A DNA stretch of 64,000 bases from Schmidtea nova (lineage: Eukaryota). Under the pieces are notes generated by a model. That model worked only from the letters and a program-made list of their open reading frames with translations, searched no databases and was not told where the DNA came from. Below are positions 20,848 to 37,882 of the stretch, one piece after another. The stretch's first letter is position 1, and the number at the start of each line of letters is the position of its first letter. The translations under genes were made by a program, and so were the position numbers. The stretch spans positions 17,298,001 through 17,362,000 of the forward strand of contig CM097884.1 of the NCBI GenBank assembly GCA_044892505.1, given 5' to 3'.

Positions 20848-23468
20848 GGTTAAAACAAAATAGTAAATTAAACTAATAATTATTTTTAAACGCTCTAGGG
20901 ATTCCTCCATCCAAAACCTCACATAAAATGCTTACATATCACACGAGCACCCTCGATCATTTCCCTATAATAATCGAGTTGGAAATGTGCAAGGTGTTTG
21001 AACAATGATGGGCAGGTGAGCTCTATTGCTAAAACTACTCCCCATTTATGTTCACGGGTTCGTCTCGCTGCCGATAGAAGGACTTACGCTTAAATTTTAA
21101 TCTATCCGCATCCATTTATCTGTCATCTCAATTATCTCTTTTCGCCCCCTTTCGTTACAATATATTTCAACTTTCAACTTTCTTTCAGCCCCCTTCTTTA
21201 CAATATCAACAAATAATATTTTTACGATATGTTATTTCTTTAATGCTATTATTGTTCATTACTTTGTGTCAATCTTTTATTTATAATCTACCTTTAATTT
21301 AATTTAGAAATCCCTTAATAAAATACTTTAGTTCATATACTTTACAATAAAATAAATACAAAACAAAAATTATTTAATAAGCAAAATTTACAAATCACAA
21401 AATTTCTAATCAAAATATTTAGAAATGTCTTCATCTGATATTGTAAAATTCATGTTCAAATCAATTTCTGGAATGTTGTTTGATCGTTGTGCCAATTGCT
21501 GGAGAACTTGTTTCTTCCAGCGACGCTGACGCGCGCCCATCTTACTCTTCTTTTTCTTTTTGACTTCTGGAATTATTACGTCCTTTGGTGTGATTGAGGC
21601 CGCCGTTGCTTGAACCTGAGATGGTTCCTCTGTGCTTGTTCCTTTTGAGCATCCTGCCTTTTCGTCAGCCCAATGCTGGTAAGTGATTGGTCGAATGAGC
21701 TGGCTGAGCTCTTGAGTTAGATATGATGCCGTTACAGATTTTAGGCATTTCTTTAATTCCATCTTCGTTGCGTCCAATTCCATTTGCAGTTCGCTGTTAG
21801 CTCGCTGTGAGCGTTGAGTTTTGGTGATTTGCATTTTCATTTGGTCTGGACTGAACCAGCTTTTCTTTAGGTTGGAAATTATTCCATCGGCTTCTTTTAT
21901 TTTCTCTGACTTTCGCAGCATTTCCTTTTCCAGGCTGCGAATTATTCTCCAGGCTTTGTCTAATTCGGCTTGATTGGTTGCTGTGTTTGCTGACATTTTC
22001 TAAAATTCAAAATGGTTTATTGACATGAAGTTAGTAGTCTTGATTCGAACGATTCTCATACCTTTGACAATTGGTAATTGTTAATTTAGGAAAAGAAAAT
22101 GATGTACCTATTACGCTTTCAACACTGTCGCTATGTACAGCGATCAGATACATTTATGTCATAATATGTTTTATTTCCACCTGTGCTATATACAGCAATC
22201 AGGTTACAAAATTATTTAAATAAACTAAGATCCGCTGCCCTATGTACAGGGTTCAGGATAAGCAATTATATTTAATTATTTAGGTGGACTGTTTGATCCT
22301 ATAGCCTATTGCTGCTATGTTACTTGCGTAGTAGATCACTACGCTATTAAATTATCGATTTTTATGTTATTGTTAAAATTACATTTTGTACAAATTCTTA
22401 ACCCTGCATCTGCCGCTCTATGCCCACAAACCCCAGATGTGACAATCGAAAAATATAGATTCACTCTCTGTGAATTCGAAAGAAAATCAGGTTAATCAAA
22501 TCGTAGTTACGTCTGTATCCAACTAGAATCAAACTCTATTCAACTATAAACTCATGAAAAACTAAATCGGTTAGAAAATAAAACTTCAACTGGTTATACT
22601 ATCCAGTGAAAAATAGGGTTAAAAATCAGGGTTAAATAAAAATTCCTACCCTCGTCACGGCGCTTTACACCGGTCGGACGGCCTAACTGTACGGAGCAGT
22701 CGTTTCTACTCGGCACAGTATGCCTCCATGTTCCCTATTGCACGGTGAACGGAGCCCCTTAAATCATACGTAATTTTATACTATAAATACGGTATATAGA
22801 TAATATATATTCGCCTCCTTCCACTGATTTCACAGTGGAAGAAGCTTGGTTTAATTCTATACTCGAAAAAAAATTTAAAAATCATATATCATAAAATATT
22901 TTATTAATAATTAACTACAATGGTCAATGACAGATAATCATAAAATTTATAAATTCAATAAACAAAAATACTCATACCTTTCAAGTTCTGTTCAAATATC
23001 TTTCAGTATCAAATAATCACAAGATCATAAAATCATAAAAGCATAAGCATATATTTTAACTGAATCTGGATCAGTATATATACTGATCAGATCAGATCAC
23101 TGACCAATCAGCTTGAAGCTGATGGTCATCAATGCAATTCTATTAAAATCAAAAATCGATTTTATTAATAAATATGATTTGCATTTTCTGGTTTTAATTT
23201 ATCGAATTTTTATTAATTCTTCTTCTTTTTTACTTATTTATTTCGCTTTCTTATTATTTAAATATAATTAAATATCATTTTCTTTAACGTTTTTACATTA
23301 TACATTTATTTTCTTCCAATTTTTTTATATTAAATTAATATTCTTTATTACATTTTAATTCGTTTTTACTGATATTTTCATAATTATATTTATTTTAATT
23401 TATTCTTATTTTCTCTCTTATTATTATTATTTTTTATGCTAAATGTGGACCAAATGGTGGATCCAACA
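20848..23468 (-). repeat. 3' LTR (left end hidden in N gap)
   Basis: Matches 35262-37882; ends ...GGATCCAACA on +. In spot comparison I saw only two substitutions (22629/37043 and 22736/37150). Confidence 0.92.
21406..21996 (-). CDS. LTR-encoded 196-aa coiled-coil protein with basic cluster (3' LTR copy)
   Basis: Intact ORF identical to 35820-36410; contains KKKKKSKMGARQRRWKK; preceded by ttttAG-aaa-ATG. Confidence 0.65.
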   Translation of the reverse strand: MSANTATNQAELDKAWRIIRSLEKEMLRKSEKIKEADGIISNLKKSWFSPDQMKMQITKTQRSQRANSELQMELDATKMELKKCLKSVTASYLTQELSQLIRPITYQHWADEKAGCSKGTSTEEPSQVQATAASITPKDVIIPEVKKKKKSKMGARQRRWKKQVLQQLAQRSNNIPEIDLNMNFTISDEDISKYFD

Positions 23469-23658
23469 TCACTCGGGGACCCCTAAAATTGCGTCCCGCA
23501 ATTAATTATACACTATTACTTATACTCAACATTCATAAAAAATTTTACGTTTGATACATAAGCATAAAGATTCACATAAGGTGAGTTTAGTCTATACGTA
23601 ATCACGAAGAAAATATAGAAAATTCAGAAAATTGTTAATCAAATATTTTGTCACGTCT

Positions 23659-35242: not shown

Positions 35243-37881
35243 TGTTGTTGGTTTCGGATTGGGTTAAAACAAAATAGTAAATTAAACTAATAATTATTTT
35301 TAAACGCTCTAGGGATTCCTCCATCCAAAACCTCACATAAAATGCTTACATATCACACGAGCACCCTCGATCATTTCCCTATAATAATCGAGTTGGAAAT
35401 GTGCAAGGTGTTTGAACAATGATGGGCAGGTGAGCTCTATTGCTAAAACTACTCCCCATTTATGTTCACGGGTTCGTCTCGCTGCCGATAGAAGGACTTA
35501 CGCTTAAATTTTAATCTATCCGCATCCATTTATCTGTCATCTCAATTATCTCTTTTCGCCCCCTTTCGTTACAATATATTTCAACTTTCAACTTTCTTTC
35601 AGCCCCCTTCTTTACAATATCAACAAATAATATTTTTACGATATGTTATTTCTTTAATGCTATTATTGTTCATTACTTTGTGTCAATCTTTTATTTATAA
35701 TCTACCTTTAATTTAATTTAGAAATCCCTTAATAAAATACTTTAGTTCATATACTTTACAATAAAATAAATACAAAACAAAAATTATTTAATAAGCAAAA
35801 TTTACAAATCACAAAATTTCTAATCAAAATATTTAGAAATGTCTTCATCTGATATTGTAAAATTCATGTTCAAATCAATTTCTGGAATGTTGTTTGATCG
35901 TTGTGCCAATTGCTGGAGAACTTGTTTCTTCCAGCGACGCTGACGCGCGCCCATCTTACTCTTCTTTTTCTTTTTGACTTCTGGAATTATTACGTCCTTT
36001 GGTGTGATTGAGGCCGCCGTTGCTTGAACCTGAGATGGTTCCTCTGTGCTTGTTCCTTTTGAGCATCCTGCCTTTTCGTCAGCCCAATGCTGGTAAGTGA
36101 TTGGTCGAATGAGCTGGCTGAGCTCTTGAGTTAGATATGATGCCGTTACAGATTTTAGGCATTTCTTTAATTCCATCTTCGTTGCGTCCAATTCCATTTG
36201 CAGTTCGCTGTTAGCTCGCTGTGAGCGTTGAGTTTTGGTGATTTGCATTTTCATTTGGTCTGGACTGAACCAGCTTTTCTTTAGGTTGGAAATTATTCCA
36301 TCGGCTTCTTTTATTTTCTCTGACTTTCGCAGCATTTCCTTTTCCAGGCTGCGAATTATTCTCCAGGCTTTGTCTAATTCGGCTTGATTGGTTGCTGTGT
36401 TTGCTGACATTTTCTAAAATTCAAAATGGTTTATTGACATGAAGTTAGTAGTCTTGATTCGAACGATTCTCATACCTTTGACAATTGGTAATTGTTAATT
36501 TAGGAAAAGAAAATGATGTACCTATTACGCTTTCAACACTGTCGCTATGTACAGCGATCAGATACATTTATGTCATAATATGTTTTATTTCCACCTGTGC
36601 TATATACAGCAATCAGGTTACAAAATTATTTAAATAAACTAAGATCCGCTGCCCTATGTACAGGGTTCAGGATAAGCAATTATATTTAATTATTTAGGTG
36701 GACTGTTTGATCCTATAGCCTATTGCTGCTATGTTACTTGCGTAGTAGATCACTACGCTATTAAATTATCGATTTTTATGTTATTGTTAAAATTACATTT
36801 TGTACAAATTCTTAACCCTGCATCTGCCGCTCTATGCCCACAAACCCCAGATGTGACAATCGAAAAATATAGATTCACTCTCTGTGAATTCGAAAGAAAA
36901 TCAGGTTAATCAAATCGTAGTTACGTCTGTATCCAACTAGAATCAAACTCTATTCAACTATAAACTCATGAAAAACTAAATCGGTTAGAAAATAAAACTT
37001 CAACTGGTTATACTATCCAGTGAAAAATAGGGTTAAAAATCATGGTTAAATAAAAATTCCTACCCTCGTCACGGCGCTTTACACCGGTCGGACGGCCTAA
37101 CTGTACGGAGCAGTCGTTTCTACTCGGCACAGTATGCCTCCATGTTCCCGATTGCACGGTGAACGGAGCCCCTTAAATCATACGTAATTTTATACTATAA
37201 ATACGGTATATAGATAATATATATTCGCCTCCTTCCACTGATTTCACAGTGGAAGAAGCTTGGTTTAATTCTATACTCGAAAAAAAATTTAAAAATCATA
37301 TATCATAAAATATTTTATTAATAATTAACTACAATGGTCAATGACAGATAATCATAAAATTTATAAATTCAATAAACAAAAATACTCATACCTTTCAAGT
37401 TCTGTTCAAATATCTTTCAGTATCAAATAATCACAAGATCATAAAATCATAAAAGCATAAGCATATATTTTAACTGAATCTGGATCAGTATATATACTGA
37501 TCAGATCAGATCACTGACCAATCAGCTTGAAGCTGATGGTCATCAATGCAATTCTATTAAAATCAAAAATCGATTTTATTAATAAATATGATTTGCATTT
37601 TCTGGTTTTAATTTATCGAATTTTTATTAATTCTTCTTCTTTTTTACTTATTTATTTCGCTTTCTTATTATTTAAATATAATTAAATATCATTTTCTTTA
37701 ACGTTTTTACATTATACATTTATTTTCTTCCAATTTTTTTATATTAAATTAATATTCTTTATTACATTTTAATTCGTTTTTACTGATATTTTCATAATTA
37801 TATTTATTTTAATTTATTCTTATTTTCTCTCTTATTATTATTATTTTTTATGCTAAATGTGGACCAAATGGTGGATCCAAC

Positions 37882-37882
<1 letters not shown>
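35243..37882 (-). repeat. 5' LTR (~2640 bp)
   Basis: TGTTG at 35243 (alternative TGTTGG at 35246) and CCAACA at 37877-37882; adjacent to the PBS; right flank is (AAT)n. Confidence 0.9.
35820..36410 (-). CDS. LTR-encoded 196-aa protein (5' LTR copy)
   Basis: Identical to 21406-21996. A candidate 62-nt 5'-UTR intron runs AAG|GTATGAG (36475) to ttttAG (36414). Confidence 0.65.
   Translation of the reverse strand: MSANTATNQAELDKAWRIIRSLEKEMLRKSEKIKEADGIISNLKKSWFSPDQMKMQITKTQRSQRANSELQMELDATKMELKKCLKSVTASYLTQELSQLIRPITYQHWADEKAGCSKGTSTEEPSQVQATAASITPKDVIIPEVKKKKKSKMGARQRRWKKQVLQQLAQRSNNIPEIDLNMNFTISDEDISKYFD

What the first reader, a model, noticed from the sequence alone, without database searches (positions are those of the whole stretch)
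20848..37882. Giant pol-less LTR retroelement carrying a ubiquitin/TNF-signalling-like cargo cassette
Seen, 5' to 3': LTR (with ORF), PBS, IAP-type RING ORF, tandem array, Gag-Ubl-Ubl, 2xFN3-TM, small coiled coil, TRAF, large coiled coil, signal+TM protein, LTR. The cargo ORFs are intact, intronless, co-oriented and share Gag's strongly A-rich sense-strand style, while all other TEs in the window are decayed. Established: TRAF2 and cIAP RING E3s act together at TNF-receptor complexes to control NF-kB and apoptosis, and viruses pirate such modules. Inference: a retro-element encoding its own receptor-adaptor-E3 module to manipulate host cell survival or immunity. From memory, planarian giant Burro LTR elements were reported with extra host-like domains; this must be compared before claiming novelty.
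Basis: partly seen in the sequence, partly recalled or inferred. Interest (0 to 1): 0.95.

Follow-up and report, generated by a model that had tools for sequence, protein, structure and literature searches.

The report
Pol-less Burro-like LTR retroelement with TRAF cargo
This is a real, very young 17-kb LTR retroelement that has a capsid (Gag) gene and a string of intact host-like signalling genes (TRAF, IAP-type RING and others) but no polymerase. This kind of cargo is already described for the giant 'Burro' retroelements of planarians, so it is an unusual variant of a known kind, not a new kind.

Summary
The anatomy is confirmed on the minus strand. Two 2,621-bp direct repeats differ at 2 bases. 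A PBS-like site follows the 5' copy. Eight intact co-oriented ORFs tile 70% of the internal 11.8 kb.

Secure ORF assignments:
- an IAP-type RING ORF
- Gag with three CCHC knuckles and a conserved C-terminal extension
- a full TRAF (RING, TRAF zinc fingers, coiled coil, MATH)

The Ubl-Ubl and 2xFN3 readings rest only on low-confidence models. No PR, RT, RNase H, integrase or env is detectable. The left edge at 20848 is set by a masked N run, so that LTR end and the target-site duplication cannot be read.

The cargo belongs to the family, not to chance host DNA. Unnamed database relatives (33-46% identity) join a RING-ORF-like part to Gag, carry the same Gag extension, and in one case follow it directly with a MATH domain.

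The literature (PMC6431247) already describes planarian Burro/GYPSM1 elements with Gag, CCHC, MATH_TRAF_C, BIR, BCL2-like, Ubl and env. So the 'TNF-signalling cargo' idea is not new.

What remains distinctive is a cargo-plus-Gag copy without pol, a full-length TRAF as a separate ORF, an ORF inside the LTR, and a shared acceptor-like motif at ORF starts. The 'receptor' reading is weak, because the FN3-TM ORF has no signal peptide and no relatives were found for it.

The parts
35243..37882 (-). 5' LTR. The duplicated part is verified for 35262-37882. The probable true end is at about 35243-35246.
   Evidence: 2,621-bp repeat with 2 mismatches. It starts with TGTTGG at 37882. The inverted CCAACA lies at 35251-35246 and is followed by ACA.
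35820..36410 (-). 196-aa ORF inside the LTR (5' copy). It is basic and coiled-coil-like, with no family assignment.
   Evidence: Identical translation in both LTRs. Only a sub-threshold Pfam hit. It is preceded by TAGAAAATG.
35218..35236 (-). PBS-like site: 19 nt starting with TGG, 6 nt after the candidate LTR end.
   Evidence: Read. Unique in the window even with 3 mismatches allowed; 0 expected by chance. The matching tRNA was not identified; no tRNA gene is in the window.
34384..34845 (-). 153-aa ORF with a C-terminal IAP-type RING (domain at 34405-34533) and no BIR.
   Evidence: zf-C3HC4_3 1e-11. XIAP, cIAP1/2 and livin RINGs 6.5e-10 to 1e-6. All Cys/His ligand positions are present. 31% identity over 135 aligned residues (ORF residues 3-132) to the N-terminus of relative P0010, which continues into Gag.
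32878..33790 (.). Tandem array, 45-bp unit x 20.8 copies, between the RING ORF and Gag. Smaller arrays lie at 34220-34331 and 31959-32114.
   Evidence: TRF score 1005, 86% matches. No ORF longer than 73 aa here.
28386..32126 (-). Gag ORF. The frame is open from 32126 and the first ATG is at 31667 (1,093 aa from there). CA-like core about 30753-31649. Three CCHC knuckles 30804-30956. Conserved C-terminal extension 28512-30122, with two beta-grasp-like units at 29304-29513 and 28749-28994.
   Evidence: zf-CCHC 4.5e-11. 11 relatives below 1e-30, 39-46% identical over the core, several with PF03732. The family profile hits the dArc2 capsid at 1.3e-3. The extension aligns with P0154, P0152 and P0008. 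The AF2 model has pLDDT 45, and the Foldseek top hits are mainly ubiquitin-like folds, none better than E = 5e-3.
27416..28561 (-). 381-aa ORF. Two all-beta FN3-like domains (28247-28507 and 27887-28135), one TM segment (27602-27658) and a 61-aa tail. No signal peptide. It overlaps the Gag ORF by 176 nt in the +1 frame.
   Evidence: fn3 at E = 0.015, below the cut-off. AF2 pLDDT 55; the Foldseek top hits are mostly FN3 domains, best 5.8e-4. Hydropathy. Frames. No homologues found.
26958..27293 (-). 111-aa ORF, coiled-coil-like, with no family assignment.
   Evidence: Preceded by TAGAAAATG.
25507..26886 (-). 459-aa TRAF-like ORF. RING 26656-26805 (eight Cys ligands), TRAF zinc fingers (26203-26361 and upstream), coiled coil, MATH/TRAF-C 25546-25956.
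   Evidence: MATH_2 2.4e-21, TRAF-mep_MATH 1e-17, zf-TRAF 1.9e-8. TRAF3/2/5/1 MATH chains about 1e-20, TRAF5/6 RING-ZF chains 3e-14 to 1e-12. The MATH domain is 33% identical to the MATH of relative P0008.
24299..25402 (-). 367-aa ORF, 49% charged or polar (E, K, R, Q, D), coiled-coil-like, with no family assignment.
   Evidence: No Pfam or PDB hit. Heptad heuristic. Preceded by TAGAAAATG.
23659..24222 (-). 187-aa ORF. Hydrophobic signal-like N-terminus, short helical ectodomain, one TM segment (23854-23910) and a 64-aa tail.
   Evidence: Hydropathy. No significant Pfam or PDB hit. No similarity to the fusion glycoprotein part of P0058.
23469..23490 (-). Weak polypurine-tract candidate just upstream of the 3' LTR.
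   Evidence: Only a short run of five purines is seen. This counts as weak evidence.
20848..23468 (-). 3' LTR, containing the second copy of the 196-aa ORF at 21406-21996. Its last approximately 19 nt and the flank lie in the masked run 20667-20847.

Best explanation
This is a recently integrated, non-autonomous (pol-less and env-less) LTR retroelement of the Ty3/gypsy type. It is related to the Burro-like giant elements described in planarians.

Shown:
- Near-identical LTRs and a PBS-like site.
- A Gag with a capsid-like core and three CCHC knuckles.
- A family-conserved Gag C-terminal extension.
- Seven further intact ORFs, including an IAP-type RING E3-like protein and a complete TRAF.
- No trace of protease, reverse transcriptase, RNase H, integrase or a fusion glycoprotein.

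Inferred:
- The element is transcribed from the 5' LTR, and its RNA is packaged by its own Gag.
- It depends on the enzymes of an autonomous relative for copying and insertion.
- The downstream ORFs, including the one in the U3 part of the LTR, are expressed from spliced (cis or trans) subgenomic RNAs. The supporting hint is the acceptor-like T-rich...AG motif directly before their ATGs.
- The TRAF, the RING and the Ubl-like parts act on host ubiquitin-dependent signalling or cell-death control. The Ubl-like parts fused to Gag may instead serve particle assembly or release. Jurka and Arkhipova & Yushenova have already hypothesised such roles for Burro.
For: LTR pair, TG start and inverted termini, unique PBS-like site.

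Gag:
- CCHC knuckles.
- 39-46% identical relatives that carry PF03732.
- Family profile hit to the dArc2 capsid.
- Some Gag relatives carry a retroviral protease (P0153) or an integrase zinc-binding domain (P0006).

Cargo is family-typical:
- P0010 joins a RING-ORF-like N-terminus to Gag.
- P0154 and P0152 have the same extension after Gag.
- P0008 has the extension followed by MATH.

Absence of pol:
- No PR, RT or IN family hit in any ORF.
- ORFs tile the interior except 32126-34384, which is largely tandem repeats.
- tblastn with 154 relatives finds nothing else inside the element.

Intactness and youth:
- 0 stops or frameshifts in eight ORFs.
- 2 LTR mismatches in 2,621 bp.

Other support:
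- Uniform A-rich sense strand.
- TAGAAAATG occurs 5 times in the window, all on the element's sense strand, and at 3 independent ORF starts.
- Published Burro architecture with the same domain themes and with tandem repeats (PMC6431247).
Against: - No direct comparison with a named Burro sequence was made. The relatives found are unnamed UniParc entries at only 33-46% identity.
- The host species is not identified by any tool. 'Planarian' rests on about 75% A+T, the domain repertoire and the literature.
- The target-site duplication and one LTR end are hidden in a masked run.
- The polypurine tract is weak, and the tRNA matching the PBS is unknown.
- BIR, ankyrin, BCL2-like, dUTPase and env, all listed for Burro, are absent.
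- Only one copy is visible. No other copy or solo LTR lies in the window, and none of the ORFs is in the 15-billion-protein collection as an exact sequence. Propagation as a non-autonomous family is therefore unproven.
- Splicing and all protein functions are inferred.
Confidence: 0.7

Rival explanations
1. This is a one-off defective provirus. An autonomous Burro-like element lost its env-pol block by a single internal deletion, during reverse transcription or after integration. In that case this copy is not a member of a propagating pol-less family.
For: Only one copy is seen. In published Burro elements env and pol lie at the 3' end of the coding region. That is exactly where this element goes, within 190 nt, from its last ORF to the 3' LTR.
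Against: Every remaining ORF is intact. Each starts at an ATG within 1-12 codons of the preceding in-frame stop (Gag excepted), which fits a designed multi-ORF layout more than a wreck. The LTRs differ at only 2 bases, leaving little time for decay either way, so the data do not discriminate strongly.
Confidence: 0.2
2. This is a domesticated or host-owned gene cluster. The TRAF, RING and membrane-protein genes now serve the host and are merely framed by old LTRs. They could then contribute to the reported expansion of TRAF genes in planarians.
For: All ORFs are intact while the other transposable elements in the window are in pieces. TRAF/MATH genes are reported as greatly expanded and expressed in Schmidtea mediterranea (PMC6109357).
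Against: LTR identity of 99.92% indicates a very recent insertion, not an old domesticated locus. Gag and the PBS-like site are retained. The ORFs have no introns and share the element's A-rich style.
Confidence: 0.06
3. This is an assembly artefact or segmental duplication. The two 2.6-kb repeats are not LTRs of one element but a collapsed or duplicated repeat that frames unrelated DNA.
For: The region lies in repeat-rich, partly masked sequence. Homologous 'X' repeats flank both sides, and one repeat end abuts an N run.
Against: The repeat starts at the same base in both copies, next to different upstream sequence, and begins with TG. A PBS-like site and Gag follow the 5' copy in the expected order. 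The copies differ at 2 bases. Relatives link the cargo to Gag within single proteins.
Confidence: 0.04

Closest known systems
Burro / GYPSM1 giant Ty3/gypsy-like LTR retrotransposons of planarians (Jurka 2007; Grohme et al. 2018; Arkhipova & Yushenova 2019, PMC6431247)
   Same: Gag with CCHC knuckles. Accessory domains for ubiquitin, TRAF and apoptosis themes (MATH_TRAF_C, Ubl-like, an IAP-related motif). Coiled-coil ('Smc'-like) stretches. Internal tandem repeats. Accessory ORFs that can be separate or fused, depending on lineage. AT-rich host genome.
   Different: This element has no PR, dUTPase, RT, RNase H, IN or env. It has no BIR, ankyrin or BCL2-like domain. It is 17 kb, not over 30 kb. 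It has several discrete ORFs in place of a polyprotein of about 4,900 aa. Its TRAF is full length (RING, zinc fingers, coiled coil, MATH), not MATH alone. It adds an FN3-like TM ORF, a small signal+TM ORF and an ORF inside the LTR. Direct sequence relatedness to a named Burro sequence was not tested.
Non-autonomous LTR retroelements (LARDs, TRIMs, Gag-only derivatives such as those known in plants)
   Same: LTRs, PBS and a large internal region without pol. Presumed dependence on an autonomous partner.
   Different: LARDs and TRIMs are essentially non-coding. Here 70% of the interior is intact coding sequence, with Gag plus seven other ORFs.
Complex retroviruses and foamy-like fish endogenous retroviruses with accessory ORFs; MMTV-type ORF in the LTR (from general knowledge and PMC6431247)
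   Same: Multiple accessory ORFs downstream of gag, presumably expressed from spliced RNAs. One ORF lies in the LTR. A-rich coding strand.
   Different: Those viruses keep pol and env. Their accessory genes are not TRAF or IAP-RING homologues.
Cellular TRAF2/3/5/6 and IAP (XIAP, cIAP) RING E3 ligases
   Same: The TRAF ORF has the complete TRAF domain order. The RING ORF matches the C-terminal RING of IAPs.
   Different: Both are encoded inside a retroelement and lack introns. The RING ORF lacks BIR domains. The TRAF RING has Cys in place of His at the fourth ligand position. The MATH domain scores higher against a retroelement-polyprotein MATH (P0008, 93.6 bits) than against any solved TRAF (77.5 bits).

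Membership tests
LTR retrotransposon (Ty3/gypsy type) | Two long terminal direct repeats in the same orientation | tested here: met
   2,621 bp, 99.92% identical.
LTR retrotransposon (Ty3/gypsy type) | TG...CA termini with a short terminal inverted repeat | tested here: inconclusive
   TG start in both copies. In the 5' copy, CCAACA + ACA lies beyond the verified repeat. 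The end of the 3' copy is masked by N.
LTR retrotransposon (Ty3/gypsy type) | Target-site duplication | not testable with these tools
   The left junction lies in the N run 20667-20847, which was not to be filled.
LTR retrotransposon (Ty3/gypsy type) | tRNA primer-binding site after the 5' LTR and a polypurine tract before the 3' LTR | tested here: inconclusive
   A unique 19-nt site starting with TGG is at the right place, but no tRNA was available to match it. The polypurine run is only five bases.
LTR retrotransposon (Ty3/gypsy type) | Gag with a capsid-like domain and CCHC nucleocapsid knuckles | tested here: met
   Three CCHC knuckles. Relatives carry PF03732. The family profile hits the dArc2 capsid at 1.3e-3.
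LTR retrotransposon (Ty3/gypsy type) | Pol (PR, RT, RNase H, IN) | tested here: not met
   No hit in any ORF. No room between the ORFs. No tblastn signal from relatives that carry PR or IN domains. The element is therefore non-autonomous.
Burro / GYPSM1 (as described in PMC6431247) | Giant size (internal region up to 25 kb, over 30 kb in total) and one polyprotein of about 4,900-5,100 aa | tested here: not met
   Internal region 11.8 kb, total about 17 kb. The longest ORF is 1,093-1,215 aa, and seven separate ORFs accompany it.
Burro / GYPSM1 (as described in PMC6431247) | N-terminal Gag followed by two or three CCHC knuckles | tested here: met
Burro / GYPSM1 (as described in PMC6431247) | MATH_TRAF_C domain, in the polyprotein or in an accessory ORF | tested here: met
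   Separate TRAF ORF. Relative P0008 has MATH fused after the Gag extension.
Burro / GYPSM1 (as described in PMC6431247) | Ubl/SUMO-like domain | tested here: inconclusive
   Two beta-grasp-like units in a low-confidence model. Foldseek hits are mainly Ubl folds, but none is better than E = 5e-3. Pfam hits are sub-threshold and the PDB profile search is negative.
Burro / GYPSM1 (as described in PMC6431247) | BIR, ankyrin and BCL2-like domains | tested here: not met
   No Pfam hit at E <= 0.1 in any ORF. Only an IAP-type RING is present.
Burro / GYPSM1 (as described in PMC6431247) | env-like fusion glycoprotein between gag and pol | tested here: not met
   No family hit. The two TM ORFs show no similarity to the fusion-glycoprotein part of P0058.
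Burro / GYPSM1 (as described in PMC6431247) | Sequence relatedness of Gag and LTR to the named Burro references; host in Dugesiidae | not tested
   No named reference is reachable by the protein tools. The host was not identified.
TRAF family | N-terminal RING, TRAF-type zinc fingers, coiled coil and C-terminal MATH/TRAF-C | tested here: met
   Pfam. PDB TRAF5/6 RING-ZF match at residues 27-156 and TRAF1/2/3/5 MATH match at residues 308-447. Eight Cys ligands and a heptad region at 231-306.
IAP family | At least one BIR domain | tested here: not met
   There is no BIR hit; only the IAP-type C-terminal RING matches. The ORF works like an IAP-type RING but is not an IAP.

The most novel reading that the evidence does not exclude
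This could be a propagating 'cargo-only' retroelement family. Such a family has given up pol and env, borrows them from autonomous Burro-like elements, and keeps under selection its own Gag plus a complete TRAF / IAP-RING / Ubl / membrane-protein set expressed from spliced RNAs. It would be a mobile signalling cassette. Copies of it could account for part of the reported TRAF/MATH gene expansion in planarians.
Probability: 0.3. Interest if true: 0.65.

Novelty: new variant of a known kind. Interest (0 to 1): 0.45.

Why it matters
If pol-less copies like this one form a family, selection can maintain the host-like signalling genes of Burro-type elements independently of the replication enzymes. 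That would argue that these genes do something for the element, or for the host, and are not mere passengers.

It would also caution that part of the 'greatly expanded' planarian TRAF/MATH repertoire (PMC6109357) may be encoded by retroelements.

The compact multi-ORF layout, with a shared motif before the start codons, gives a concrete and checkable prediction of how such elements express many genes from one transcript.

Tried and rejected
- The exact-sequence look-up of the TRAF ORF in public assemblies and of all eight ORFs in the protein collection found nothing.
- The search for homologous proteins gave one distant cellular-type TRAF for the TRAF ORF and nothing for the FN3-TM ORF.
- Pfam, PDB sequence and PDB profile searches gave no significant assignment for the 111-aa, 367-aa, 187-aa and LTR ORFs, or for the Ubl-like units.
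- The 187-aa signal+TM ORF as an env remnant: no similarity to a Gag-linked fusion glycoprotein. Left open, not supported.
- The separate ORFs as debris of a broken polyprotein: rejected as the main reading. Apart from Gag, each begins at an ATG within 1-12 codons of the preceding stop, and none carries an internal stop or frameshift.
- The borderline Mut7-C hit in the RING ORF (exactly at the cut-off) and the PC-Esterase hit in the LTR ORF were treated as noise in K/E-rich sequence.
- The tRNA scan and the Rfam scan of the window found nothing.
- Grohme et al. 2018 could not be read in the held library.
- Short TRAF-binding peptide motifs in the TM-protein tails were looked at by eye and dropped as uninformative.

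Full report
**1. Observation**

The element lies on the minus strand. Two direct repeats, 20848-23468 and 35262-37882, are 2,621 bp long and differ at 2 positions.

Read in the sense direction, both copies start at the same base with TGTTGG, next to unrelated upstream sequence. So this repeat boundary is real.

The other boundary is not. Coordinate 20848 is the first base after the masked run 20667-20847, so the similarity has to stop there. In the 5' copy the sequence continues for about 19 nt. It reaches CCAACA, the inverse of the start, followed by ACA. Six nt further comes a 19-nt site that begins with TGG (35218-35236). That site is unique in the window even with three mismatches allowed.

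I did not fill the masked stretch. As a result, the target-site duplication and the end of the 3' LTR cannot be assessed. The polypurine tract before the 3' LTR is weak.

**2. Coding content**

Seven ATG-ORFs of 111-1,093 aa cover 70% of the 11.8-kb interior on one strand. In 500 shuffles the longest ORF averaged 67 aa and never exceeded 128 aa.

An eighth ORF of 196 aa lies inside the LTR and is identical in both copies.

None of the eight ORFs contains a stop or a frameshift, so there are 0 breaks. What is missing (pol, env) is missing as a whole.

The sense strand is 44-50% A in the seven internal ORFs and 40% A in the LTR ORF. The other ORFs of the window have 24-33% A.

**3. Identities**

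*RING ORF (34384-34845).* It has an IAP-type C-terminal RING: Pfam zf-C3HC4_3 at 1e-11, and XIAP, cIAP1/2 and livin chains at 6.5e-10 to 1e-6. All ligand residues are present. It has no BIR domain.

*TRAF ORF (25507-26886).* It is a complete TRAF.
- The RING plus zinc fingers match TRAF5/6 chains at 3e-14 to 1e-12.
- zf-TRAF scores 1.9e-8.
- A heptad region lies at residues 231-306.
- The MATH domain scores 2.4e-21 and matches TRAF3/2/5/1 chains at about 1e-20.

*Gag ORF.* It has three CCHC knuckles. Its core gives no Pfam hit itself, but it is 39-46% identical to a dozen database proteins. Several of these carry Retrotrans_gag. A profile of the family reaches the Ty3/gypsy-derived dArc2 capsid at 1.3e-3.

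*'Ubl-Ubl'.* The C-terminal 500 aa of the Gag ORF are conserved in relatives. The model has low confidence (pLDDT 45). It shows two beta-beta-alpha-beta-beta units, and its Foldseek hits are mainly ubiquitin-like folds: Elongin B, ISG15, NEDD8, SUMO and ubiquitin itself. None is better than E = 5e-3. Sequence tests are sub-threshold or negative. I rate this reading plausible but unproven.

*'2xFN3-TM'.* The single-sequence model has pLDDT 55. It gives two all-beta domains and a TM helix, and its Foldseek top hits are mostly FN3 domains (best 5.8e-4). The Pfam fn3 hit is below the cut-off. The N-terminus is strongly hydrophilic. If translation starts at this ORF's ATG, there is no signal peptide and a receptor-like topology is doubtful. 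No relative was found.

*Remaining ORFs.* The 187-aa ORF has a signal-like N-terminus and one TM segment. The 111-aa, 367-aa and LTR ORFs have no assignment.

**4. No pol**

- No ORF hits a protease, RT, RNase H, integrase or fusion-glycoprotein family.
- The only unassigned stretch, 32126-34384, is 2.2 kb, and 0.9 kb of it is a 45-bp tandem array.
- tblastn with 154 relatives, some carrying protease or integrase domains, hits nothing else inside the element.

**5. The cargo belongs to the family**

- P0010 joins a RING-ORF-like N-terminus (31% identical over 135 aligned residues, ORF residues 3-132) to Gag.
- P0154 and P0152 have Gag, CCHC and the same extension.
- P0008 has the extension followed within about 55 residues by a MATH domain.
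- The window's MATH is 33% identical to the P0008 MATH. It scores higher against it than against any solved TRAF.

These relatives are unnamed UniParc entries. That they come from a planarian is my inference, not a tool result.

**6. Comparison with what is known**

Arkhipova & Yushenova 2019 (PMC6431247) summarise Jurka 2007 and Grohme et al. 2018. Their account of Burro/GYPSM1 elements of Schmidtea mediterranea is as follows.
- The elements are over 30 kb.
- ORF1 is 4,873 aa and starts with Gag and three CCHC knuckles.
- It carries 'AIR1', Smc-like, MATH_TRAF_C, BIR, ankyrin, BCL2-like and Ubl/SUMO-like motifs.
- It also carries an in-frame env, followed by PR, dUTPase, RT, RNase H and IN.
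- Tandem repeats are drawn in the figure.
- In a Dugesia tigrina relative, MATH_TRAF_C sits in a separate accessory ORF.
- The authors already propose that the element meddles with host apoptosis and ubiquitination.

So the architecture theme and the functional idea are published. Incidentally, my Gag-family profile hits yeast AIR2 through its CCHC knuckles. This suggests that the published 'AIR1' motif reflects the knuckles, not a RING.

The window's element fails several descriptive features of Burro: size, a single polyprotein, BIR/ANK/BCL2, env and pol. I therefore call it Burro-related, not a Burro.

**7.

- The nonamer TAGAAAATG occurs five times in the window, against 2.1 expected on both strands. 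All five lie on the element's sense strand. Four of them form the start of an ORF: the LTR ORF twice, the 111-aa ORF and the 367-aa ORF.
- The RING and TRAF ORFs also have a T-rich...AG shortly before their ATG. I read this as a candidate splice acceptor for subgenomic RNAs. This is an inference. From general knowledge, flatworms also use spliced-leader trans-splicing.
- The Gag frame is open for 153 codons upstream of its first ATG.
- The FN3-like ORF overlaps the Gag ORF by 176 nt in the +1 frame.

**8. Mechanism and rivals**

*Best reading (0.7).* This is a young non-autonomous Burro-related element. It makes its own Gag and accessory proteins and relies on a relative's enzymes.

*Main rival (0.2).* It is a single provirus that lost env-pol by one deletion. 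Only a copy census can decide between these two.

*Minor rivals.* Domestication (0.06) is disfavoured by the near-identical LTRs, and an assembly artefact (0.04) by the ordered LTR-PBS-Gag layout.

**9. Steps left out, and a slip**

Before I settled on that reading I made one look-up of the window's own TRAF ORF. It returned nothing, and no DNA was fetched.

The slip: while reasoning, I wrote out from memory a short stretch of a human IAP RING finger and generic tRNA T-loop/CCA-end motifs. The comparisons in this report rest only on tool hits.

**10. Verdict**

The novelty claim is largely pre-empted by the Burro literature. What remains is a pol-less, cargo-retaining variant with a testable expression model.

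Interest is 0.45.

Noticed in passing
20410-20666, 37879-38140, 48078-48239, 11973-12210, 10750-10854, 7859-7958, 8597-8696: A multi-copy repeat ('X', 78-99% identical between copies). It contains a (TAA)n run and a palindromic stretch, and every copy abuts a masked N run. The masked stretches look like the rest of one satellite-like repeat. The LTR element sits between two X units in the same orientation.
   Followed up: partly
36408-36416 / 21994-22002, 27291-27299, 25400-25408 (also 34629-34637): TAGAAAATG occurs only on the element's sense strand and forms the start of three independent ORFs. It is a candidate splice-acceptor plus start context.
   Followed up: partly
31668-32126: The Gag reading frame stays open for 153 codons upstream of its first ATG, across a 54-bp repeat (31959-32114). 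This could mean a non-AUG start or an upstream exon. It is unexplained.
   Followed up: no
28386-28561: The Gag ORF and the next (FN3-like) ORF overlap by 176 nt, and the second ORF is in the +1 frame. This resembles a gag-pol style overlap, although no pol follows.
   Followed up: no
46001-49140: A GC-rich patch (GC 0.44 against about 0.25 around it) holds a reverse-transcriptase fragment (RVT_1 5.7e-13 at 46145-46546, minus strand) split into several short ORFs. It is a decayed, unrelated retroelement.
   Followed up: partly
16-747 (+), 52112-52750 (-), 61645-62196 (+): A further RT fragment, a mariner/Tc1-type HTH transposase fragment, and a protein-kinase-like ORF (Pkinase 1.2e-13) that may be an exon of a host gene.
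   Followed up: no
29746-30270, 30446-31168, 26729-27214 (+ strand): Long plus-strand ORFs inside the element are antisense to the A-rich coding strand. They were not searched against any family library and are taken as by-products of the strand's composition.
   Followed up: no
P0058 (protein): A distant Gag-like protein in the library carries a Monjiviricetes-type fusion glycoprotein domain in the same chain (2.7e-95). This echoes the published in-frame env of Burro elements.
   Followed up: partly
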